This document shows positions 36,344 through 45,819 of a stretch of DNA of 64,000 nucleotides, piece after piece (positions within the stretch are counted from its first letter, which is position 1; each line of letters opens with the position of its first letter). Below the pieces are notes generated by a model. The model was given only the letters and a program-made list of their open reading frames with translations. It ran no database searches and was not told the DNA's origin. The stretch lies in the IMG/VR virus record IMGVR_UViG_3300023174_000045, positions 1 through 64,000 of that record; one strand, given 5' to 3'. Both the position numbers and the translations under genes were made by a program.

Positions 36344-36655
36344 ATGGCACACAGCGATACCCGCACACGAATCAAACCATCAGAGGCCGTAATAGAGCCG
36401 CCTATGTTTAAAGTTATCTACTTGAACGATAACCAAACCACAATGGAATTTGTTGTGGACAGCCTGGTCGAATATTTTGACTACACACCGGCCACTGCCG
36501 AACAAATCACCATAGACATTCATCAAGCAGGACAAGCCACAGTGGCAGTGTTGCCTTACGAAGTTGCCGAACAAAAAGGCATCGAAGTCACAATCAGCGC
36601 AAGATCACAAAGTTTTCCACTGCAAATCAAGCTGGAACCTGAAACTGTAAATTAA
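36344..36655 (+). CDS. clpS: Clp adaptor ClpS
   Basis: FKVIYLNDNQTTMEFVV, IHQAG, FPLQI. Confidence 0.9.
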   Translation: MAHSDTRTRIKPSEAVIEPPMFKVIYLNDNQTTMEFVVDSLVEYFDYTPATAEQITIDIHQAGQATVAVLPYEVAEQKGIEVTISARSQSFPLQIKLEPETVN

Positions 36656-37440
36656 TCGTCTACAACAATGCGCAAGGGATGGTATACATGTTGTTTCCAC
36701 TCAGTATCACCTCGACCTCTGCAGTTGTTGACAAACCGCACACCTTGACGTATTTGATCCACTGATCCATGATAGTGACCAAAACACCAGGTGTGCAATT
36801 TCTTCTCTGTGTCTGCACTCAAGGCCTGCATCATAAAACTGTTGCCCATGGTATTGAATCTTAGAGTTTCTGCCAATCCGATGTCGTGTGCAACCAAACT
36901 TGCATTGGGCACCGTGTGCGTGACACACACAATCTTGTTGACGTCATTGTGAGTTTGCAGACGTTTCACACTGCCAATCATGTAAGTACTGTCGGTTCGG
37001 GCCATGCGTCCCACAGTTTTGGCCACGGTGCCGTTGACCTTGGCATAATCTTGAAACCAAAGCGATGACTGCTCTGCATCAATACTGAGATCGAAATCAT
37101 AAGTCCACCAACCATTTGTGCCTATGATTGCTACCCCGTCAACCACTGCAACATTGTCTTGCAAGTATACCACATTGGGTATTCTTCTTATTTTTTTAGC
37201 AAGATCTGCATAACTGCTGTTTAAATCGTTAAGATAATATCTGTGTTCGTCATTGCCGTCTACGTAAAACACCGCCTGATAACATTGTCCAAGATGCCTT
37301 AACGAATCAACAACCACTGTGCGGTCACGTGCAATATCACCAGCTACAACGCAATAAGGACTGGTGGCCAGGCCTGACCAATCAAATCCGGGCCAGGTTT
37401 CAGTGTGTAAATCAGAAATTAAATCAAACGCAAAACTCAT
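36652..37440 (-). CDS. calcineurin-like metallophosphoesterase
   Basis: SDLH, GDI, GNDEH, THTVP, FGHYH. Confidence 0.85.
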   Translation of the reverse strand: MSFAFDLISDLHTETWPGFDWSGLATSPYCVVAGDIARDRTVVVDSLRHLGQCYQAVFYVDGNDEHRYYLNDLNSSYADLAKKIRRIPNVVYLQDNVAVVDGVAIIGTNGWWTYDFDLSIDAEQSSLWFQDYAKVNGTVAKTVGRMARTDSTYMIGSVKRLQTHNDVNKIVCVTHTVPNASLVAHDIGLAETLRFNTMGNSFMMQALSADTEKKLHTWCFGHYHGSVDQIRQGVRFVNNCRGRGDTEWKQHVYHPLRIVVDD

Positions 37441-38108: not shown

Positions 38109-38133
38109 AGTGGCTTCTCCTGTGTGATATTTA

Positions 38134-39132
38134 TTACACAACAGGTACCAGATTGTCTCTAAAAATTTCCCATGCTGTTTGCCATGACCAGCGTTGACTG
38201 CCGTCCCACACACGATGTCTGGGCAAGAACAAGCAATCGGTGACAGCTTGTTTCAAGTAAGGATTCATGCATCCTGTGATGCCTTCGTCTATGACATCCA
38301 GTGGTCCTGTAGCAGGATAAGCAGCCACTGGAGTTCCGCAGGCCATGGCTTCAATCATCACAATGCCAAATGTTTCCCACTGACTGGGAAACACAAATAC
38401 ATCTGCTAGGTTGTAGTAGTAGGCTAGATCAGCACCAGTTTTGAATCCCACATACTCTACGTCTGGATAACGTGATTGCAATTCTGCACGATACGGTCCA
38501 TCGCCTACCAAAATCTTGCGTGAGTTGGGATAGCTCATGCCGCAGAAATCATCCAAGTTCTTTTCTTTGCTGACTCTGCTGACACACACCAAGACAGTCT
38601 TATCATTGGGCAAGCGTTCTCTGGGATAAAATATTTCACGGTCTACACCGCGAGTCCATGGCACAATGTCGCCGTCAAATCCATGCTCACGTAACTCTTG
38701 CACCATAGTTTCGGTTGTAGTCAACACCTTACCGCTATGCTTATGAAACCAACGCACTAGAGGCCAAGTAATGGCTTCAGGTATGCCAAACAGTTTTCTA
38801 AGTCCTTCTGGAAATTTAGTATGATAAGCAGTGTTGTAGCGATAATGATGTTTGTCAAGATATTGTCTAACACGCAGACCAACAGGACCTTCTGTGGCGA
38901 TGTGGATATGATCCGGACGGATCTCCTCAAGTATCGCGCCCACATTCCGGGGAATGGCAATCTTGACTTGGTGGTAGCCAGGGCAATCAAAGTAGCGGAA
39001 CCGCCCGGGATCAAGATATACAACACGATAGTTGTCCAGAATCGCATGCGCCTCAATATTTTTATAGGTTGTAACCACGCCATTGATTTGATCCGGTAAG
39101 TTGTCTGTAACGATCAAGATTGTTTTTGACAT
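38134..39132 (-). CDS. agt: GT4 glycosyltransferase, Agt-like diacylglycerol glycosyl/glucuronosyltransferase
   Basis: ILIVTD...QINGVVTT, PDHIHIATEGPVG, TAYHTKFPE, RVSKEKN, ETFGIVMIEAMACG; downstream of plcP-like gene. Confidence 0.78.
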   Translation of the reverse strand: MSKTILIVTDNLPDQINGVVTTYKNIEAHAILDNYRVVYLDPGRFRYFDCPGYHQVKIAIPRNVGAILEEIRPDHIHIATEGPVGLRVRQYLDKHHYRYNTAYHTKFPEGLRKLFGIPEAITWPLVRWFHKHSGKVLTTTETMVQELREHGFDGDIVPWTRGVDREIFYPRERLPNDKTVLVCVSRVSKEKNLDDFCGMSYPNSRKILVGDGPYRAELQSRYPDVEYVGFKTGADLAYYYNLADVFVFPSQWETFGIVMIEAMACGTPVAAYPATGPLDVIDEGITGCMNPYLKQAVTDCLFLPRHRVWDGSQRWSWQTAWEIFRDNLVPVV

Positions 39133-39287
39133 TGCCCTGTTACCTTGAATGTTTTAAACTTTAAATCATATTTCATAGTCGCCAGCACCTGCTCGCAACT
39201 GATTTGATTTGGGAAAACTAATTCTATTCTTCCGGGTTGATCTTGCGGGTTCGTTGTGTGTACTGCTATCAATATCATCAACCACAT
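39114..39287 (-). CDS. 57-aa hypothetical protein nested in the plcP 3' extension (not in ORF track)
   Basis: MWLMILIAVHTTNPQDQPGRIELVFPNQISCEQVLATMKYDLKFKTFKVTGQCQKQS; overlaps the agt start. Confidence 0.55.
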   Translation of the reverse strand: MWLMILIAVHTTNPQDQPGRIELVFPNQISCEQVLATMKYDLKFKTFKVTGQCQKQS

Positions 39288-40038
39288 TGTCGCTCTCCTG
39301 TGTCCAAGTTACAATTTCCCATGTGCCATCATGCCGCTCTACCAAGGCTGTGCATGACTCTACCCAGTCACCGTCATTCATGTACACAATGCCATCTATA
39401 TCTTTGATTTCTGCGTGATGTATGTGTCCACAGATCACACCGTCAAATCCACGTTTCTTGCAGTATTGAGCAAGATTGTGTTCAAAGTGAAATATAAAGT
39501 CTACTGCTTTTTTGACCCGATGTTTAAGGAACAGGCTAAGGCTAAAGTACCCAAAACCGAAACGATGACGAATCCAATTGATCCGAGTATTGAGGCCAAG
39601 AATGAAATCATATGCTTTGTCTCCTAACATTGCCAACCACGGCGCCAGTCTAGTAATACCGTCAAATAAATCTCCATGCACTACTAGATAGTGTCGGCCG
39701 TCTGCACCTATATGCTCTGTTTGATTTACCAATTCAATTATGCCAAACCCAATGCCATAGTGCATGAAAGGTCTTAAAAACTCGTCATGATTACCAGCCA
39801 CATATACAACCCTAGTACCACGCTTGCTATGGCCCAGAACGCGGCGGATGACATTGGTGTGACTTTGTTTCCATCGCCACTTGTTTTGTTTGATTTTCCA
39901 GGCATCTATTATGTCTCCTACAAGATATAGTGTTTCGCAGGTGTTGTGTTTGAGAAAGTTGTTGAGTTTGTCAGCCTGGCAGTCTTTGGTGCCAAGATGA
40001 ACATCGCTGATAAAAATACTGCGATAAGTTTTTTGCAT
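39166..40038 (-). CDS. plcP: PlcP-type Mn-dependent phospholipase C (LpxH-like metallophosphoesterase)
   Basis: SDVHLG, GDIID, GNHD (not LpxH GNRD), HGD, GHIHH, NDGDWVES; membrane-binding insert LAMLGDKAY...FSLS. Confidence 0.82.
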   Translation of the reverse strand: MQKTYRSIFISDVHLGTKDCQADKLNNFLKHNTCETLYLVGDIIDAWKIKQNKWRWKQSHTNVIRRVLGHSKRGTRVVYVAGNHDEFLRPFMHYGIGFGIIELVNQTEHIGADGRHYLVVHGDLFDGITRLAPWLAMLGDKAYDFILGLNTRINWIRHRFGFGYFSLSLFLKHRVKKAVDFIFHFEHNLAQYCKKRGFDGVICGHIHHAEIKDIDGIVYMNDGDWVESCTALVERHDGTWEIVTWTQESDNVVDDIDSSTHNEPARSTRKNRISFPKSNQLRAGAGDYEI

Positions 40039-40060
40039 GTATTATTTAAATCTATATGTG

Positions 40061-40078
40061 TTACAGTAACATTACAAA
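40061..40078 (-). promoter_or_regulatory. Pho box upstream of plcP-agt
   Basis: TTGTAAT-GTTA-CTGTAAC vs consensus CTGTCAT-N4-CTGTCAY; followed by N9-TTTAAATAAT. Confidence 0.75.
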
Positions 40079-40122
40079 CTGCCATCACATAAATGTGTAA
40101 TATGTTGGCACATAAATACCCA

Positions 40123-40764
40123 GTGAAACCCACCATAGCCCTGTTCATATACGATCCCAAATGCTCAGTCCAATGCGGAAATGGCATGATACAGGCATTG
40201 AGTCCCTACTACAACTTCAAACTGTTCTCAAAGAATCGTGTGGAGAATGTGTTCTTTGATGATGTGGACATGGTTGCTGTGCCCGGGGGCATAGGTGACG
40301 CAGATGTCTTTAAACAACTGTTCAAAAATAATGGCGACCGTGTGCGTAAATTTATTGCTGACGGGGGCAGGTACCTGGGCATTTGCATGGGTGCGTACTG
40401 GGCAGGAAGCCACTATCTCAATGTATTACAAGATGTAGATGCTGTGCAATACTTGAAACGTCCAGGTGCAGACACACGCAGACCGCATGCCAAAAACATG
40501 TCTATTACCTGGCGCGGCCGACCTGATCACATGTTCTGGTATGATGGATGTGCTCTAGTAGGAGACAACACCAAGTTTGAAACTGTGTCAACTTATGTCA
40601 ACGGTGATGCCATGGCCATCATACAAAACAGAATTGGTTTGATAGGATGTCATCCTGAAGCAGATAAATTTTGGTATGATGGCTATTCCTGGATGCGCCG
40701 ACATTGGACCGGTAATCGTCATGCAGAACTGGTAGAGTTTACCGACCAAATCATGCGGTCATAA
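40123..40764 (+). CDS. class I glutamine amidotransferase-like / BPL_N-like protein
   Basis: VPGG.GD, YLGICMGAY nucleophile elbow, GCHPE; GTG 4 nt after TAAATA. Confidence 0.7.
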   Translation: MKPTIALFIYDPKCSVQCGNGMIQALSPYYNFKLFSKNRVENVFFDDVDMVAVPGGIGDADVFKQLFKNNGDRVRKFIADGGRYLGICMGAYWAGSHYLNVLQDVDAVQYLKRPGADTRRPHAKNMSITWRGRPDHMFWYDGCALVGDNTKFETVSTYVNGDAMAIIQNRIGLIGCHPEADKFWYDGYSWMRRHWTGNRHAELVEFTDQIMRS

Positions 40765-40787
40765 AAAAAAGGCCCTTCTGGGCCTTT
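40763..40787. terminator. intrinsic terminator between convergent genes
   Basis: AAAGGCCC-TTCT-GGGCCTTT with flanking A-run. Confidence 0.75.
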
Positions 40788-40839
40788 AGTACTGGTTACG
40801 AGTTCCAGTGCCGCTCTATCGTTGCGGTCGATTTTTCTA

Positions 40840-41976
40840 TTAGAAGCGATGTTGGATACCAACTGCCACAGCATTCTGCTTGTATTTGCTGTCGCTGAAA
40901 GTTGATGTGTCCTGGCTGGGAACCCAACGATCATACACAGTAAACGGAGCAGTAGCACCTGATGCACGAGTTGCAACCACATAGTCGGCAAACACTTGTG
41001 TGCGCTTGCTGAAATCATAAGTCACGCCAACAGCAGTCATTTTGACATTGTTAATGCCAGCAGTGACTTTGTCTTTGACCATGTAGTAACCGCCATTTAC
41101 GCCAAGATTGGCATTGACTTTGTACTTGGCGCCAACAAATGTTGTTTCAGCATCAGTCTTGCCATCGGCCTTGGTTGAGCTGGCATAGTAGTTGGTTTGT
41201 GCTGTGGGATTGTCAGTCTTAGCATAGCCTGCATTTACAGTTAATGCAGGCGTAACATCATATTTCACAGCATACAAATCAATCTTTTCACTGATAACTG
41301 AACTGCTCAAACGCACTTCTTCGTGTGTGTATGCCAAGTCCAACGGGCCTGCGGTGTAACGAACACCTACGTTGGTACCAGATTTATAAGCAGTGTCATC
41401 GGGCTGGTTGCCAAATGCTTTGGCGTAGTCAAACTTGAAACCGCTGTAGTCTTTGCTGGACCAGCGAACCATGTTGTCAAAGCGGCTCACACCTGAACCT
41501 GAGTAGAAACCAGCATAACGAGCAATGGGTTTCATACCACCAAAGTTCCAGTTGCCACGGCTATCAAATTCATCTAGCACGTTGTACAAAAAGTTTTTGC
41601 CACGACCCAATTTGACTTCACCAAAGCTGCCGCTGAGGCCCACATTGGCTTCGCGGTCAAACAACACAGTACCATTGGTGCCTGTGCCTGCTGAGTCTTT
41701 GCCAGCAGCGCCAGTGCGCAAACTCATGTTGCCTTCCAATTGGAAATTGGCTTTCAAACCATCACCAAGGTCTTCTGAACCTTTGATACCAAAGCGATTG
41801 CTGTTGTGAGCTTGGTCTGCAACACCAGTGAAATCACTGTTACTGCTGGTAAAGCCACTGCCACTGACAATGCCAGCGCCAACCACACCATACACTTGTG
41901 TGTTGTTTTGTGCTTGAGCAGTGCCAGCAACGCCGACAGCAACCAATGCCGCAATTAAAATATTCTTAAATTTCAT
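40840..41976 (-). CDS. outer-membrane porin (Betaproteobacterial general porin family)
   Basis: Signal peptide; SNRFGIKGSEDLGDGLKANFQLE, LFDREANVGLSG.FG...GR; C-terminal Phe. Confidence 0.9.
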   Translation of the reverse strand: MKFKNILIAALVAVGVAGTAQAQNNTQVYGVVGAGIVSGSGFTSSNSDFTGVADQAHNSNRFGIKGSEDLGDGLKANFQLEGNMSLRTGAAGKDSAGTGTNGTVLFDREANVGLSGSFGEVKLGRGKNFLYNVLDEFDSRGNWNFGGMKPIARYAGFYSGSGVSRFDNMVRWSSKDYSGFKFDYAKAFGNQPDDTAYKSGTNVGVRYTAGPLDLAYTHEEVRLSSSVISEKIDLYAVKYDVTPALTVNAGYAKTDNPTAQTNYYASSTKADGKTDAETTFVGAKYKVNANLGVNGGYYMVKDKVTAGINNVKMTAVGVTYDFSKRTQVFADYVVATRASGATAPFTVYDRWVPSQDTSTFSDSKYKQNAVAVGIQHRF

Positions 41977-42006
41977 AGTTTCTCCTTTGTAAATTACTAT
42001 GGGTTT

Positions 42007-42035
42007 ATTATATAGTATTTCTACTAACAATACAA
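42007..42035 (-). promoter_or_regulatory. sigma70 promoter for porin
   Basis: TTGTAT-N17-TATAAT. Confidence 0.7.
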
Positions 42036-43052
42036 CTATTTCTTGACCTGTGTCCAAACTTCGCTACGAATGCGATCCGTAACAGCTTTTGGCAATGGCA
42101 CATAGTCAAGATCTGCAGCCATTTTACCACCGTTTACAAAACTCCAGTCAAAGAATTTGATGACTTCTTGACCAGTCTTTGCATTTTTGGGTTCACGATA
42201 CATCAGCACAAACACAGCACCTGTGATGGGCCATGATTGCGCACCCTTTTGATTTACCAAACTGATGCCCATGCCCGGAACACTGAACCAATCAGCACCG
42301 GCAGCCGCTGCCGCAAATGTCAGATCATCGGGCTCGACCCATTTGCCGTCGCGATTTTGCAAACGTGCATAGCTGATTTTGTTTTTCTTGGCATAAGCAT
42401 ATTCTACGTAGCCAATGGAATTTTTGATACGTGTTACATTGGCAGCAACACCTTCATTGCCTTTGCCGCCCACACTGCTGGTGGCAGGCCATTTCACAGC
42501 GGCGCCTTTGCCAACTTCGTCTTTCCACAGTGGGCTGACTTCAGTCAAGTAGTCTGTGAAAATAAATGTTGTACCTGACCCATCCGCACGATGCACCACT
42601 GTGATGGGTTCGGCAGGCAATTTAACCTTGGGGTTCAAGTCTTGGATACGCTTGTCGTTCCACGTCACAATGTGTCCCACAAAGATCTTGGCCAGTACTT
42701 CACCGGTCAACTGCAACTCGCCAGGTTTGATGCCTTCTACATTGATGATTGGCACCACGCCGCCCAGCACAGCAGGAAACTGGATCAAGCCAGCGGCTGT
42801 TAATTCATCACCTTTCATGGGTGCATCACTGGCACCAAAATCCACTGTACCTGCTTTGATTTGCTTGATGCCGCCGGAACTACCAATGCTTTGATAGTTT
42901 AGTTGCACATCAGATTTTTCTCTGTAAGCTTCTGACCATTTAGAGAACATGGGAAAGGCAAATGTTGAACCTGCCCCTGTGATTGTTTCTGCATTTGCTT
43001 GTGGACTCATCAAGTACAATGATGCCGCAATTATTACCAAGATTTTTTTCAT
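42036..43052 (-). CDS. pstS: phosphate ABC transporter substrate-binding protein PstS
   Basis: GAGSTF, YQSIGSSGG, DFGASD, RADGSGTT, IGYVE, WPI. Confidence 0.95.
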   Translation of the reverse strand: MKKILVIIAASLYLMSPQANAETITGAGSTFAFPMFSKWSEAYREKSDVQLNYQSIGSSGGIKQIKAGTVDFGASDAPMKGDELTAAGLIQFPAVLGGVVPIINVEGIKPGELQLTGEVLAKIFVGHIVTWNDKRIQDLNPKVKLPAEPITVVHRADGSGTTFIFTDYLTEVSPLWKDEVGKGAAVKWPATSSVGGKGNEGVAANVTRIKNSIGYVEYAYAKKNKISYARLQNRDGKWVEPDDLTFAAAAAGADWFSVPGMGISLVNQKGAQSWPITGAVFVLMYREPKNAKTGQEVIKFFDWSFVNGGKMAADLDYVPLPKAVTDRIRSEVWTQVKK

Positions 43053-43104
43053 GTGTTTGTTCCTTTGTGAATGTGCGATGCACAAATTATTTAAACACAA
43101 AGAT

Positions 43105-43122
43105 GTTACAGTAGTATTACAG
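43105..43122 (-). promoter_or_regulatory. Pho box upstream of pstS
   Basis: CTGTAAT-ACTA-CTGTAAC; followed by N9-TTTAAATAAT, same geometry as at plcP. Confidence 0.82.
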
Positions 43123-43329: not shown

Positions 43330-44565
43330 TTATTTTTTGAGCAGTATCTCATGAATTTTTCTTAGATGTTTCCCAGTTCGATTTTGATCCATAATAGTCA
43401 TGGCATGATCTAAATTTGTTTTGTATTCTTGTATTACTTGATCAAAAAACTTGTTAAAAAAATGTTGTCGATTGTGTTGGCAAATTCTGTCAAGATCAAT
43501 CATGAGTTGTTGTTTTGTTGATGTGTCAAGTTGGCTGATTCTTTGCATTTCTTTAACTATGGCCTGTAATCTCAAGTGCGGCTCAGTTATTGAATCATAT
43601 GACTCATTGATATAGTCTGAGAATGTTTCAAAACCATAGTTTCTAAGATATTGCAAACTGCCTGGAGTGGCTGCCAATATAAAAGGTTTGCCACAGGCAA
43701 TGGGCCTTAAAGTTTTTTCTGTGAGATGCCACCGTTGATCATCAAACACAGTTTCTAATACTATTTCAATGGCTGACTCGCTGTAGTCCGTTGAGTTGTA
43801 ATCCGCACTGTATGAACTGTCAGTGGTGTTGCTTGGCAAATAGGTGTGTAAGTCAACACTGGTTATGCGTAAATTGTTGTTGACAAAGGCATGATTACGA
43901 TAGTCTACTTGATTGTCAGTGATACTAAAGCTGGTATTTGCACAGGTTTGCAGTCCATGATTGCACAACAGTTCAGTAAAAAACAAACGATATTCTCTAG
44001 TGCCACTCCATGCTCGATTATAAATTAAAAAATCTTTTTTTATTTTATGCCAGCTGAAACCAAGACTTGGATCATGCTCAGCATATCTAAACCAATCTTG
44101 AGAGATCACAGCATGGCTCCAGTAGTAAACAGGTACAAATCCATGTTTGGCAAATACCTCAACATTGGCGCTGTTTTGTTCTGAGTGCAACAACAATGTG
44201 AGATCGTATTGATTGATACAAGCTGTGAGTGATCGCAAATATTGATCGGCAGTGTATTCAAGCACTGCATCATCAGTTAACCAATCAGGATTGTAGCCTT
44301 CTATTCTGGTGGCACTATTTTGATTCAAATAGTTGTTTTTGGTTTGAGTTTTGATTTGTTCTCTGGTGTAGTAGTTCCAAATCAAGGGTTCTTGATCATG
44401 GCAGATCATTGGTGCATCAGTCACCGTTTGCCGCCCAAAATAAATGGTCAGTTGATTTAAATCTTCAAGTTTTCTTGAGCCGTGTGGCGCCCAGCGATAA
44501 ATTATTAGATCGTGGTTGACAATGTCCGCCAAGTAATGATATAATCTGTCTAAGGGAACGCTCAT
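43330..44565 (-). CDS. putative glycosyltransferase-like protein
   Basis: HDQEP, YNR..SG.REYR, IVLET...HLTEKTLRPI...PFI...L..YGFETF...ESYD. Confidence 0.55.
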   Translation of the reverse strand: MSVPLDRLYHYLADIVNHDLIIYRWAPHGSRKLEDLNQLTIYFGRQTVTDAPMICHDQEPLIWNYYTREQIKTQTKNNYLNQNSATRIEGYNPDWLTDDAVLEYTADQYLRSLTACINQYDLTLLLHSEQNSANVEVFAKHGFVPVYYWSHAVISQDWFRYAEHDPSLGFSWHKIKKDFLIYNRAWSGTREYRLFFTELLCNHGLQTCANTSFSITDNQVDYRNHAFVNNNLRITSVDLHTYLPSNTTDSSYSADYNSTDYSESAIEIVLETVFDDQRWHLTEKTLRPIACGKPFILAATPGSLQYLRNYGFETFSDYINESYDSITEPHLRLQAIVKEMQRISQLDTSTKQQLMIDLDRICQHNRQHFFNKFFDQVIQEYKTNLDHAMTIMDQNRTGKHLRKIHEILLKK

Positions 44566-45819
44566 ATGAAGAAAAAAATTGGGTTTATTGGAATTGGTAA
44601 ATTGGGCCTTGATTGTGCTGAAGTCATGGCCGAAAAACACGAAGTGCGCGGTTACGATATTTACCCACGAGTCAGTAGCTCAGTAAAAGTTTGCGACATT
44701 GATGAACTTGTAAACAAAAGTGAATGGATCTTTATTGCTGTGCCCACACCACATGCCAAAGGTTACGATGGCAGTGCGCCCAGCAGTCATTTAGAACCCA
44801 GAGACTTCGAATATGATGCTGTGATCGATGCCATCAACAACGTGAACAAATACGCCAAAACTTCTAAAAAAGTTGTGTTGATCAGTACTGTGCTGCCAGG
44901 CACCACACGCAAAAAGTTTGTTCCACTGCTAGATAAAAAACATCAGTTCTTGTACAACCCTTATTTGATTGCCATGGGGTCAGTGAAGTGGGACATGGTC
45001 AATCCTGAAATGGTCATGATTGGTACCGAAGACGGCAATCCCAATGCATTGGCTGGCGAGTTGATTGACTTGTACAAAACCATGATGCAAAACGATCCAC
45101 GTTATGAAATTGGCACCTGGGATGAGTGTGAAGCCATCAAGATCTTCTACAACACATTCATTTCAGCCAAGATTGGTCTTGTTAACATGGTTCAAGACTT
45201 TGCACTCAAAATTGGCAACATCAATGTTGATGTGGTCACTGACGCTCTCAGCAAGAGTACCATGCGCATCATGGGACCAAAATACATGACAGCAGGCATG
45301 GGCGATGCAGGTGCTTGTCATCCCCGAGACAACATTGCCCTGCGCTGGTTGGCCAAGGAATACAAAATTGGTTACGACTTGTTTGACACTGTGATGACTG
45401 CTAGAGAAGCACAAGCCAAGAACATGGCACTGTTTTTGATATATCATGCAAACAATCATGCAGTGGGAAAAGTTTTGCCCATTGTGATTCACGGCAAAGC
45501 GTACAAACCTGACGTTGAATACTGCATTGGATCCTACAGCACATTGGTAGGCCATACCATCAAAGAAATGGGTTATCATCTCATGTATGTGGATCCATTG
45601 GCTGATGACAGAACTGATGTGGTTGACTTAGTAGGCGTGCCAGCAGTTTATTTGTGGGCGCACAATCGCAAGATCACTTATGACTACACCGGTGATCAAG
45701 AAGAAACCACAGCCTATTGTCACATACTGCCGGGCAGTGTGATTGTTGATCCATGGCGCACACTTGAGCCAATCGAAGGCATTGATGTAATTCATTATGG
45801 TGACACACGCGGTTGTTAA
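44566..45819 (+). CDS. ugd: UDP-glucose/GDP-mannose 6-dehydrogenase
   Basis: GIGKLG Rossmann, AVPTP, ISTVLPGT, YNP, EAIKIFYNTF, G.GDAGACHPRD. Confidence 0.88.
   Translation: MKKKIGFIGIGKLGLDCAEVMAEKHEVRGYDIYPRVSSSVKVCDIDELVNKSEWIFIAVPTPHAKGYDGSAPSSHLEPRDFEYDAVIDAINNVNKYAKTSKKVVLISTVLPGTTRKKFVPLLDKKHQFLYNPYLIAMGSVKWDMVNPEMVMIGTEDGNPNALAGELIDLYKTMMQNDPRYEIGTWDECEAIKIFYNTFISAKIGLVNMVQDFALKIGNINVDVVTDALSKSTMRIMGPKYMTAGMGDAGACHPRDNIALRWLAKEYKIGYDLFDTVMTAREAQAKNMALFLIYHANNHAVGKVLPIVIHGKAYKPDVEYCIGSYSTLVGHTIKEMGYHLMYVDPLADDRTDVVDLVGVPAVYLWAHNRKITYDYTGDQEETTAYCHILPGSVIVDPWRTLEPIEGIDVIHYGDTRGC

What the first reader, a model, noticed from the sequence alone, without database searches (positions are those of the whole stretch)
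40038..43122. Hybrid promoter architecture: Pho box exactly 11 bp upstream of the phage late core TAAATA, twice
Seen: on the minus strand, TTGTAAT-GTTA-CTGTAAC (40061-40078) and CTGTAAT-ACTA-CTGTAAC (43105-43122) are each followed by 9 nt and then the identical TTTAAATAAT. TAAATA is the motif that precedes late/structural genes throughout this window. Established: PhoB binds 11-bp-periodic CTGTCAT-type repeats and normally activates sigma70 with a -10 about 10 bp downstream; host-Pho control of cyanophage pstS is known. Inference: host PhoB may gate a phage late (gp55-type sigma) promoter, integrating host P status with the phage late programme. Alternatively TTAAAT serves as a weak sigma70 -10.
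Basis: partly seen in the sequence, partly recalled or inferred. Interest (0 to 1): 0.78.

Follow-up and report, generated by a model that had tools for sequence, protein, structure and literature searches.

The report
Pho box fused to phage late promoter
A large freshwater phage carries two phosphate-starvation gene cassettes (phosphate-binding protein plus porin, and a membrane-lipid remodelling pair). Each is driven by a promoter that joins a host PhoB binding site, at a fixed 11-bp distance, to the phage's own T4-like late promoter core instead of a normal bacterial -10 box. This design recurs in dozens of related phages and in none of the 75 box-bearing bacterial pstS promoters examined.

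Summary
**Observation.** Confirmed, apart from one box that is off by 1 nt. On the minus strand, TTGTAATGTTACTGTAAC (40060-40077) and CTGTAATACTACTGTAAC (43105-43122) are each followed by 11 nt and then TAAATA. That is 2 matches against 0.00 expected by chance.

**Genes driven.** The sites drive pstS plus a porin, and a PlcP-like metallophosphoesterase plus a GT4 glycosyltransferase. Both are classic Pho-regulon functions.

**Origin.** The window is not a cyanophage. It is a 225-kb fragment of a roughly 350-kb jumbo phage, and its PstS is closest to Burkholderiales.

**Comparative test.**
- In related phage contigs the box-to-TAAATA spacing is 11 nt in 54 distinct promoters and 21 nt in 32, with almost nothing else.
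- 62 of 75 box-bearing bacterial pstS promoters have the box, then exactly 10 nt, then TAnnnT. None has TAAATA.

**The TAAATA motif.**
- It is the most enriched upstream hexamer in this phage.
- It precedes tail-fibre and virion genes.
- Near-complete relatives encode a gp55 late sigma.

**Geometry.** The extra base pair keeps the box at -40 to -23 relative to a T4-type start site.

**Verdict.** The hybrid architecture is real and conserved. PhoB binding, activation, and which sigma factor is used all remain untested.

The parts
43105..43122 (-). Pho box 2: CTGTAAT-ACTA-CTGTAAC, two 7-bp direct repeats 11 bp apart. The stop codon of the small upstream ORF lies inside the first repeat.
   Evidence: Homologous boxes occur in 31 of 52 distinct phage pstS upstream regions.
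43094..43104 (-). 11-nt spacer ATCTTTGTGTT. It contains a degenerate third repeat, TTGTGTT, in register with the box.
43088..43093 (-). TAAATA core of the pstS promoter (T4-late-like). The transcription start is predicted about 5-6 nt downstream, near 43082-43083.
   Evidence: Register taken from PMC2988020.
43072..43084 (-). Palindrome TGTGC-ATC-GCACA, beginning 3 nt after TAAATA (its GTGC...GCAC core begins 4 nt after). It is either a hairpin at the 5' end of the mRNA or an operator.
   Evidence: The same element is present at the same offset in 12 of 33 phage pstS promoters and in 0 of 78 bacterial ones.
42036..43052 (-). pstS, the periplasmic phosphate-binding protein (338 aa, with signal peptide and a Shine-Dalgarno AAAGGA).
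   Evidence: NF008171 at 402 bits against a cut-off of 339. Also.
40840..41976 (-). Gram-negative porin (Porin_4, 378 aa, Shine-Dalgarno AAGGAG). It lies 59 nt after pstS and is probably co-transcribed with it.
40768..40787 (-). Intrinsic terminator (8-bp stem with 5 G-C pairs, followed by a T run) that ends the pstS-porin unit.
40060..40077 (-). Pho box 1: TTGTAAT-GTTA-CTGTAAC.
   Evidence: Homologous boxes occur in 50 of 76 distinct phage plcP-like upstream regions.
40043..40048 (-). TAAATA core of the plcP-like promoter. It is followed by only 4 nt (ATAC) before the ATG and there is no Shine-Dalgarno, so a leaderless or near-leaderless mRNA is predicted.
39166..40038 (-). PlcP-like metallophosphoesterase (290 aa). 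Its N-terminus resembles LpxH, but it scores far below the LpxH cut-offs.
38134..39132 (-). GT4 glycosyltransferase (332 aa). Its best named matches are glycolipid synthases. It is probably co-transcribed with the plcP-like gene.
40084..40118 (+). Possible weaker divergent composite: ATCACATAAATGTGTAAT (8 of 10 scored positions), then 11 nt, then TAAATA, then CCCA, then GTG.
   Evidence: It is conserved only in close relatives, and the G001 homologue has TAAATA but no box.
40123..40764 (+). Divergent gene with a BPL_N / class I glutamine-amidotransferase-like fold. Its start is revised here to the GTG at 40123.
   Evidence: The G001 homologue begins MKPKVALFVYDPKCSVQ.

Best explanation
These are two phosphate-responsive composite promoters of a jumbo phage of a freshwater proteobacterium, probably in the Burkholderiales.

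Each has a PhoB-type box: two nTGTAAy repeats with an 11-bp period. The box sits where a -35 element would be. The core 11 nt downstream is the phage's own TAAATA element, not a sigma70 -10 box. TAAATA is the six 3' bases of the T4 late promoter TATAAATA, which the late sigma factor gp55 recognises.

By T4 numbering, TAAATA occupies -11 to -6. An 11-nt spacer therefore puts the box at -40 to -23. That is where bacterial Pho promoters put it, using a 10-nt spacer and a hexamer at -12 to -7.

Proposed mechanism: in a phosphate-starved host, phosphorylated PhoB binds the box and recruits or stabilises the polymerase holoenzyme that initiates at TAAATA. The pstS-porin and plcP-like-glycosyltransferase cassettes would then still respond to phosphate after the phage has moved RNA polymerase away from sigma70.

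Shown here:
- the elements themselves;
- the fixed spacing, conserved across many phages;
- the contrast with bacterial promoters;
- that TAAATA is the phage-wide promoter motif;
- gp55 genes in relatives.

Inferred: that PhoB binds, that it activates rather than represses, that the holoenzyme carries a gp55-type sigma, and the timing of expression.
For: **1. The composite is far beyond chance.** It occurs twice against 0.00 expected.

**2. The downstream genes are Pho-regulon classics.**
- pstS scores 402 bits, with a porin after it.
- A PlcP-like esterase is followed by a GT4 glycosyltransferase.
- PlcP-glycosyltransferase operons with Pho boxes are described in PMC4796936.
- In related phages the same box also precedes PhoX (PF05787, 410 bits).

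**3. The spacing is sharply fixed.** Across 129 related viral loci, box-to-TAAATA spacing has peaks at 11 nt (54 distinct promoters) and 21 nt (32). Only 10 nt (5) and 22 nt (6) occur beside them. The 14 at spacing 0 are a degenerate third repeat inside the 11-nt spacer, and a few singletons make up the rest. The spacer sequences themselves differ.

**4. The conserved hexamer is TAAATA.** The base before it is T 35, G 13, C 3 and A 3 times. None of the 54 class-11 promoters has TAnnnT at 10 nt.

**5. Bacterial pstS promoters differ.** These are Burkholderiales and others at 47-68% PstS identity. 75 of 79 have a box, 62 of the 75 have TAnnnT at exactly 10 nt, and none has TAAATA.

**6. TAAATA is the phage's general promoter motif.**
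- It is the top upstream hexamer in this contig.
- In the related loci it is enriched 8.5-fold, second only to the Shine-Dalgarno hexamer AAGGAG.
- In the complete relative G001 it precedes 103 of 424 genes.
- It precedes tail fibre and virion genes.

**7. gp55 is in the lineage.** gp55 homologues (phrog_234, E 1e-22 to 1e-25) are present in G001 (100% complete), G002 (94%) and G004. The G001 helicase is 75% identical to the window's, and PA5oct's is 48%.

**8. The core tracks the phage, not the gene.** Phage groups in which TAAATA is not the general motif carry their own motif in front of plcP, and no box-plus-TAAATA.

**9. A whole-genome count agrees.** G001 has exactly two perfect composites in 360 kb, and they lie in front of pstS and plcP.

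**10. The box binder is probably host-encoded.** No OmpR/PhoB-type winged-helix regulator is encoded in this contig or in five relatives.

**11. The numbering has a published basis.** The T4 late motif starts at -13 (PMC2988020).
Against: - No gp55 gene is in this 225-kb contig. Its presence is inferred from relatives and from about 35% of the genome being missing.
- No gp45 clamp was detected in relatives, but that search also failed on all of its control genomes, so it is uninformative.
- From established knowledge, PhoB activates through sigma70 region 4. A gp55 holoenzyme lacks region 4, and in T4 the co-activator gp33 occupies the beta flap instead. A direct PhoB-gp55 polymerase contact therefore has no precedent.
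- The many phage promoters are homologous, so the counts overstate the number of independent events.
- TAAATA also precedes non-late-looking genes such as DNA ligase.
- No transcript 5' ends or expression data could be obtained.
- Computational Pho-box predictions in phages have proved unreliable when tested by EMSA (PMC10976474).
Confidence: 0.5

Rival explanations
1. One core is shared by two polymerase forms. Early in infection, host sigma70 holoenzyme with PhoB~P uses TAAATA as an imperfect -10, giving phosphate-dependent expression. Later, the gp55-type holoenzyme uses the same TAAATA without PhoB, giving constitutive late expression. The box and the late core are superimposed rather than working together.
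For: - Relatives show a tandem form of this logic. In all 7 phoX promoters and 5 of 8 pstS promoters of the 21-nt class, the box is followed at exactly 10 nt by a canonical TGnTAnnnT, and TAAATA follows 5 nt after that. These phages therefore do combine a sigma70 Pho promoter with a late core.
- TAAATA keeps the T at -12 and the A at -11 that sigma70 needs.
- The E. coli phoE promoter is recalled, from memory and not checked here, to use TAAAAA as its -10.
Against: - Sigma70 Pho promoters in 62 of 75 bacteria use a 10-nt spacer, and only 1 has TAnnnT at 11 nt. The phage class uses 11 nt.
- TAAATA lacks the T at -7 that the bacterial hexamers in this set share.
- The plcP start codon lies only 4-5 nt after TAAATA. 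That fits a start site 5-6 nt downstream better than the usual sigma70 distance of 7 nt.
Confidence: 0.27
2. These are ordinary sigma70 Pho promoters. TTAAAT (at 10 nt) or TAAATA (at 11 nt) is just a weak -10, and the match to the phage-wide motif is a coincidence of AT-rich sequence.
For: - TTAAAT lies exactly 10 nt from the box at both window sites and in all 19 class-11 pstS promoters.
- That is the bacterial spacing.
Against: - In plcP promoters the position before TAAATA is G, T, A or C (GTAAAT 12, TTAAAT 13, ATAAAT 3, CTAAAT 2), so TTAAAT is not the conserved unit.
- All six bases of TAAATA are invariant in all 54 class-11 promoters, by construction of that class, while the flanks drift. 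Bacterial -10 hexamers vary at their three middle positions.
- The phage's own sigma70-type promoters use TATAAT with TTGACA.
- Phage groups without the TAAATA motif do not place it in front of plcP.
Confidence: 0.08
3. The repeats are bound by PhoB, or by another factor, as a brake or insulator on an otherwise constitutive late promoter. Alternatively they are bound by an unrecognised phage protein rather than by host PhoB.
For: - A protein bound at -40 to -23 would occupy the place where gp33 and the gp45 clamp sit in T4 late complexes.
- The phage half-site is systematically TGTAAy (134 of 162), while bacterial boxes are TGTCAy (131 of 150).
Against: - Repressing pstS, plcP and phoX under phosphate starvation makes no physiological sense.
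- Three unrelated Pho-regulon gene families carry the box.
- No winged-helix regulator of the PhoB family is encoded by these phages.
- TGTAAy half-sites also occur in bacterial boxes (16 of 150).
Confidence: 0.08

Closest known systems
Enterobacterial and Burkholderiales PhoB-dependent promoters (pstS, phoA, phoE type)
   Same: - An 18-bp box of two 7-bp direct repeats with an 11-bp period lies in place of the -35.
- The downstream genes (pstS, a porin, phosphatase and lipid remodelling genes) are the same kinds.
- The box would sit at -40 to -23.
   Different: - The spacer is 11 nt, not 10.
- The core is an invariant TAAATA, not TAnnnT.
- The half-site is TGTAAy rather than TGTCAy.
T4-type late promoters (TATAAATA, gp55/gp33/gp45)
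   Same: - The TAAATA core is identical to the 3' six bases of TATAAATA.
- There is no -35 element in the general class.
- The motif precedes virion genes and lies close to start codons.
- gp55 homologues are present in relatives.
   Different: - The 5' TA of the T4 motif is not conserved here.
[quoted passage not shown]
- The gp55 homologues are 277-298 aa and carry an insertion.
- No gp45 or gp33 was identified.
Host PhoBR control of cyanophage pstS/phoA and other genes (P-SSM2, as cited in PMC10976474; S-PM2d, PMC10976474)
   Same: A phage-borne phosphate-acquisition gene is placed under a host Pho-regulator site, so that phage gene expression tracks the host's phosphate status.
   Different: - The host group and the box type differ. 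The cyanobacterial box is PyTTAAPyPy(T/A) repeats.
- No fixed coupling to a late core has been described for cyanophages.
- Here the cassettes also include a porin and a lipid-remodelling pair.
T4 middle promoters (MotA box with sigma appropriation)
   Same: An activator site centred near -30 replaces the -35 at a fixed distance from the downstream core.
   Different: - The activator there is phage-encoded MotA, acting with AsiA on sigma70, and the core is a sigma70 TAnnnT.
- Here the site looks like one for a host regulator, and the core is the late type.
- This comparison rests on established knowledge and was not tested here.

Membership tests
PhoB-dependent (Pho regulon) promoter | Pho box: two 7-bp direct repeats of the CTGTCAT type separated by 4 bp (11-bp period) | tested here: met
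   Both sites score 10 of 10 on nTGTnAy-N4-nTGTnAy. The variant half-site TGTAAy also occurs in bacterial boxes.
PhoB-dependent (Pho regulon) promoter | The box lies 10 bp upstream of a sigma70 -10 hexamer (TAnnnT) | tested here: not met
   The spacer is 11 nt and the hexamer is TAAATA. None of the 54 class-11 phage promoters has TAnnnT at 10 nt, against 62 of 75 bacterial ones. The sigma70 scan finds no promoter at either site.
PhoB-dependent (Pho regulon) promoter | The downstream genes belong to the phosphate-starvation response | tested here: met
   pstS, a porin, and a PlcP-like esterase with a glycosyltransferase. PhoX is driven the same way in relatives.
PhoB-dependent (Pho regulon) promoter | PhoB~P binds, and transcription depends on phosphate limitation | not testable with these tools
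   This needs EMSA or footprinting and expression assays. The RNA runs that were found gave no usable signal.
T4-type late promoter | TATAAATA-like core near -10 with no -35 element | tested here: met
   TAAATA is invariant and has no conserved upstream flank in the general class. Only six of the eight T4 positions are conserved.
T4-type late promoter | The phage encodes a gp55-family late sigma factor | tested here: inconclusive
   It is absent from this contig, which is 65% complete. It is present in relatives G001, G002 and G004 at E 1e-22 to 1e-25. Relatedness is shown by 73-75% helicase identity for G001 and G004, and 56% for G002.
T4-type late promoter | The motif precedes late (virion and lysis) genes | tested here: met
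   It precedes a tail fibre gene, virion structural proteins and a 1074-aa lysozyme-domain protein. It also precedes some replication and metabolic genes.
T4-type late promoter | Activation by the gp45 clamp and gp33 co-activator, with late timing | tested here: inconclusive
   phrog_223 found nothing in relatives, but it also found nothing in any control genome. gp33 was not searched. Timing cannot be tested with these tools.
Cyanophage pstS under host PhoBR | Cyanobacterial host and a cyanobacterial-type Pho box | tested here: not met
   The nearest cellular PstS proteins are from Burkholderiales at 55-68% identity, whereas cyanophage PstS proteins are 33-36% identical. The box is the proteobacterial type.
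LpxH (UDP-2,3-diacylglucosamine diphosphatase) | Score above the curated equivalog cut-off over the full length | tested here: not met
   44.5 bits against a cut-off of 134, and 36.3 against 190. Only residues 6-124 match. Source names of 'LpxH' are automatic.
PlcP-glycosyltransferase lipid-remodelling operon | An LpxH-like metallophosphoesterase next to a glycolipid glycosyltransferase, behind a Pho box | tested here: met
   for the genes, and (PMC4796936) for the definition. Phospholipase C activity itself cannot be tested here, and no sequence comparison with a characterised PlcP was made.

The most novel reading that the evidence does not exclude
Host PhoB~P directly activates a polymerase holoenzyme that carries a phage gp55-type sigma factor and therefore has no sigma70 region 4. 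The contact would have to be a new one, for example with the roughly 100-aa insertion in these gp55 homologues, with the free beta flap, or with alpha. That would make a host stress regulator a replication-independent substitute for the sliding-clamp activator of late transcription. It would let phosphate-acquisition and lipid-remodelling genes respond to phosphate during the late, DNA-synthesising phase of infection.
Probability: 0.4. Interest if true: 0.88.

Novelty: new variant of a known kind. Interest (0 to 1): 0.78.

Why it matters
Phages are known to borrow host phosphate-stress genes. In cyanophages they are also known to borrow host Pho regulation. It has not been described that a host regulator's site is grafted, at single-base-pair precision, onto a promoter core read by a phage sigma factor. 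I found no paper linking PhoB with gp55, and none describing a phage plcP gene.

If PhoB really works with the late holoenzyme, it would show that a response regulator thought to act through sigma70 region 4 can drive a sigma factor that lacks it. It would also explain how a phage keeps sensing nutrient status after taking over transcription.

The data also show several things that bear on phosphorus cycling in lakes:
- A PlcP-like esterase is very widespread in environmental phages. It occurs in 480 IMG/VR contigs, and the protein search hit its ceiling of 8000 scored clusters.
- That gene, pstS-porin and phoX are all carried as Pho-boxed cassettes.

Finally, the three promoter forms give a ready-made natural mutant series for experiments: fused at 11 nt, tandem with a real -10, and at 21 nt without one.

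Tried and rejected
**Searches that gave nothing useful**
- Near-identical phage records: none found.
- gp55, a second late-sigma family and gp45 in the window's own contig: no match. This is uninformative because the contig is a fragment.
- gp55 in five closer but small fragments: none found.
- gp45 in relatives: no match, but the search also failed on every control genome, so it says nothing.
- Pfam on the gp55 homologues: no sigma region 4 or any other domain.
- RNA evidence. Two runs held only 5% of the sampled words, as assembled contigs of 90-95% relatives. One of the two is probably DNA. No read starts were reported, so there is no information on start sites or expression.

**Readings considered and rejected**
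- Cyanophage origin: rejected on PstS similarity and box type.
- TTAAAT as the -10: rejected by the variable base before TAAATA.
- TAAATA as a translation signal rather than a promoter: rejected. The motif falls into two distance classes, 4-7 nt from start codons with no Shine-Dalgarno, and 15-26 nt upstream with a Shine-Dalgarno in between.
- A phage-encoded PhoB-like regulator: none found.
- A third weaker composite in front of the divergent gene: seen, but not supported in G001.

Full report
**1. The observation**

Reading the minus strand shows two sites.
- Site 1: TTGTAATGTTACTGTAAC-ACATATAGA-TTTAAATAAT-AC-ATG.
- Site 2: CTGTAATACTACTGTAAC-ATCTTTGTG-TTTAAATAAT, followed 31 nt later by the pstS ATG.

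Pattern searches place the boxes at 40060-40077 and 43105-43122. The 10-mer lies at 40041-40050 and 43086-43095, its only two occurrences in the window. The composite of box, 11 nt and TAAATA matches twice against 0.00 in shuffles. In the whole 225,080-bp contig, only these two sites combine a high-scoring box with TAAATA.

**2. The genome**

- The window is the first 64 kb of a single linear viral contig of 225 kb with 44.8% G+C. CheckV estimates it at about 65% complete.
- It has no close relative among deposited phages.
- Its helicase is 48% identical to that of jumbo phage PA5oct and 46% to that of Atu_ph07. It is 73-97% identical to those of several IMG/VR contigs.
- Its PstS is 33-36% identical to cyanophage PstS. 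It is 55-68% identical to PstS of Burkholderiales such as Limnohabitans, Hydrogenophaga, Comamonadaceae and Oxalobacteraceae.
- The porin belongs to the Porin_4 family.

The host is therefore most likely a freshwater betaproteobacterium, not a cyanobacterium.

**3. The genes the sites drive**

- Site 2 precedes pstS (NF008171, 402 bits). A porin with its own Shine-Dalgarno follows, and a strong terminator closes the unit at 40768-40787.
- Site 1 precedes a 290-aa metallophosphoesterase. Its N-terminus resembles LpxH, but it scores far below the LpxH cut-offs.
- That gene is followed by a GT4 glycosyltransferase whose best named matches are glycolipid synthases.

The site 1 pair matches the PlcP-glycosyltransferase arrangement that remodels membrane lipids under phosphate starvation. 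In bacteria that arrangement carries Pho boxes (PMC4796936). Enzyme activity is inferred, not shown.

**4. Conservation in related phages**

PstS relatives were found in 49 viral loci. The esterase was found in 480 viral contigs, of which 80 were fetched. After removing duplicate upstream sequences:
- 31 of 52 phage pstS promoters have a box scoring at least 9 of 10. In 19 of them TAAATA starts at 11 nt, in 7 at 21 nt and in 1 at 10 nt. Four have no TAAATA.
- 50 of 76 plcP-like promoters have such a box. In 30 TAAATA starts at 11 nt, in 9 at 21 nt, in 2 at 22 nt and in 1 at 10 nt. Eight have no TAAATA.

Across all 129 viral loci, regardless of the downstream gene, the spacing distribution has two sharp peaks: 11 nt (54 distinct sequences) and 21 nt (32). 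The 14 cases at spacing 0 are a degenerate third repeat inside the 11-nt spacer of pstS promoters.

The spacer sequences differ widely, for example ACATATAGATT, GGTCTTCTGCG, CGATTGAGCGG and CAAACAGGTTG. The six bases of TAAATA do not change. The base before TAAATA is T, G, C or A. This rules out TTAAAT as the selected element.

**5. Contrast with bacteria**

Of 79 distinct bacterial pstS upstream regions:
- 75 have a box;
- 62 of the 75 have TAnnnT starting exactly 10 nt after it (TAGACT, TACACT, TAGAGT, TATCTT, TAAAGT and others);
- only one has TAnnnT at 11 nt;
- none has TAAATA.

Bacterial half-sites are mostly TGTCAy (131 of 150). Phage half-sites are mostly TGTAAy (134 of 162).

**6. What TAAATA is**

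- It is the most enriched hexamer upstream of genes in this contig.
- In the related loci it is enriched 8.5-fold, second only to the Shine-Dalgarno hexamer AAGGAG.
- It has no conserved flank and no -35 partner.
- It precedes a tail fibre gene, virion proteins and a large lysozyme-domain protein.
- A separate class of promoters in this phage looks like sigma70 consensus, TTGAC(C/A)...TGnTATAAT.
- The T4 late promoter is TATAAATA, with its first base at -13 (PMC2988020).

A gp55 family profile finds nothing in this fragment. It does match ORFs of 277-298 aa in three relatives. Two of those are 94-100% complete, and two have helicases 73-75% identical to the window's.

In the complete relative G001:
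- 103 of 424 genes carry TAAATA upstream;
- the only two perfect composites in 360 kb precede pstS and the plcP-like gene.

Phage groups whose loci lack TAAATA as a general motif put a different, group-specific motif in front of their plcP gene, with no box-plus-TAAATA. The core next to the box therefore tracks the phage's own transcription system.

**7. Geometry**

- With the T4 register, TAAATA occupies -11 to -6. An 11-nt spacer covers -22 to -12, so the box spans -40 to -23.
- With a sigma70 hexamer at -12 to -7 and a 10-nt spacer, the box spans the same positions.
- The one extra base pair is therefore what is needed to keep PhoB in the same place relative to the polymerase and the start site.

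Two internal observations support a start 5-6 nt after TAAATA.
- In this phage and in G001, about a third of TAAATA-bearing genes have their start codon 4-7 nt after the motif with no Shine-Dalgarno. That implies leaderless mRNAs.
- The plcP-like gene keeps 4-5 nt across dozens of loci.

A palindrome, GTGC-N3-5-GCAC, begins 4-5 nt after TAAATA in 12 of 33 phage pstS promoters and in none of 78 bacterial ones. That fits a hairpin at the very 5' end of the transcript.

**8. The 21-nt class**

- In all 7 phoX promoters and 5 of 8 pstS promoters of this class, the spacer contains TGnTAnnnT starting exactly 10 nt after the box. This is a canonical, extended -10 Pho promoter like the bacterial ones.
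- TAAATA follows 5 nt later.
- These phages therefore place a sigma70 Pho promoter and a late core in tandem. That argues TAAATA is not itself read as the sigma70 -10.
- The remaining 21-nt cases (9 plcP, 3 pstS, 8 other genes) have no such hexamer.
- The 10-bp difference from the main class is one helical turn.

**9. Mechanism and its limits**

The fixed spacing implies that the polymerase initiating at TAAATA interacts with whatever binds the box. Three facts point to host PhoB as that binder:
- the form of the box;
- three unrelated Pho-regulon gene families downstream of it;
- no phage gene for a PhoB-type regulator.

The open question is which sigma factor is involved. From established knowledge, PhoB works through sigma70 region 4. 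A gp55 holoenzyme lacks region 4, and in T4 gp33 occupies the flap. Direct activation would need a new contact.

The main rival is dual use of one core by both holoenzymes. I rate the cooperative hybrid model at about 0.5 and dual use at about 0.27. Plain sigma70 use and a repressor or other binder each get about 0.08.

**10. Prior knowledge**

- Host PhoBR control of cyanophage genes is established. PhoB binding to some phage promoters has been shown, with the warning that predicted boxes often fail (PMC10976474).
- Searches found no paper that links PhoB with gp55, and none that describes phage plcP as an auxiliary gene.
- The PA5oct study reports only sigma70-like promoters.

The fused architecture looks undescribed. 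I class it as a new variant of host-regulated phage promoters.

Noticed in passing
window 38134-40038 (-); loci L050-L129: A PlcP-like esterase, often with a glycosyltransferase after it, is very common in environmental phages. It occurs in 480 IMG/VR contigs, and the protein search hit its ceiling of 8000 scored clusters. I found no paper that describes it as a phage auxiliary gene.
   Followed up: partly
whole contig G000 and relative G001 (L222-L239): About a third of TAAATA-preceded genes have the start codon only 4-7 nt after the motif, with no Shine-Dalgarno. This implies many leaderless late mRNAs. The other class has 15-26 nt with a Shine-Dalgarno in between.
   Followed up: partly
window 43072-43084 (-); L001, L008, L011, L039, L044, L050, L052, L053, L056, L057, L106, L121: The palindrome GTGC-N3-5-GCAC begins 4-5 nt after TAAATA in 12 of 33 phage pstS promoters and in 0 of 78 bacterial ones. 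The stem sequence is conserved while the loop varies. It could be a 5'-terminal mRNA hairpin or a protein operator.
   Followed up: partly
window 43094-43104 (-): The 11-nt spacer of pstS promoters holds a degenerate third repeat (TTGTGTT) in register with the box and directly next to TAAATA. It is absent from plcP promoters.
   Followed up: no
L005, L009, L010, L019, L020, L026, L045 (phoX); L021, L027, L031, L041, L048 (pstS): Relatives have tandem promoters: box, then 10 nt, then (in 11 of the 12, with a TGn extension) TAnnnT, then 5 nt, then TAAATA. Related phages also carry a PhoX alkaline phosphatase (PF05787, 410 bits) behind such a promoter.
   Followed up: yes
window 40093-40764 (+): The divergent BPL_N / amidotransferase-like gene probably starts at the GTG at 40123, not the ATG at 40093. 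TAAATA lies 4 nt upstream of that GTG. In G001 its homologue sits directly before pstS, so it may belong to a phosphate-stress gene island.
   Followed up: partly
L076, L081, L083, L100, L103, L105, L107, L109, L111, L114, L117, L122, L125: A different phage group (37% G+C) has a conserved motif, TCGGTCAC-N8-GGTGACTCTGGAACCGTAACCAG, before plcP and before several other genes. It looks like that group's own promoter or hairpin signal.
   Followed up: no
window 44516-44545 (+): A perfect sigma70 consensus promoter (TTGACA, 18 nt, TG-TATAAT, 12 of 12 positions) lies in front of the UDP-glucose dehydrogenase gene (44566-45819).
   Followed up: no
window 38133/40113: One assembled contig from a freshwater run joins 38133 to 40113 with 5 other letters in between. 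It skips exactly the glycosyltransferase, the plcP-like gene and their promoter. Support is weak: a 28-nt side and relatives of 90-95% identity. It suggests the cassette is an insertion/deletion module.
   Followed up: no
window 36652-37440 (-): A second metallophosphoesterase (262 aa, phrog_1649) has TAAATA 6 nt before its ATG but no Pho box.
   Followed up: no
L131:1450-2283 (-), L133:1528-2424 (-): The gp55 homologues of this phage lineage are 277-298 aa, against 185 aa in T4. They have a long insertion after the conserved N-terminal NYLNNK motif, and the insertion matches no known domain.
   Followed up: partly
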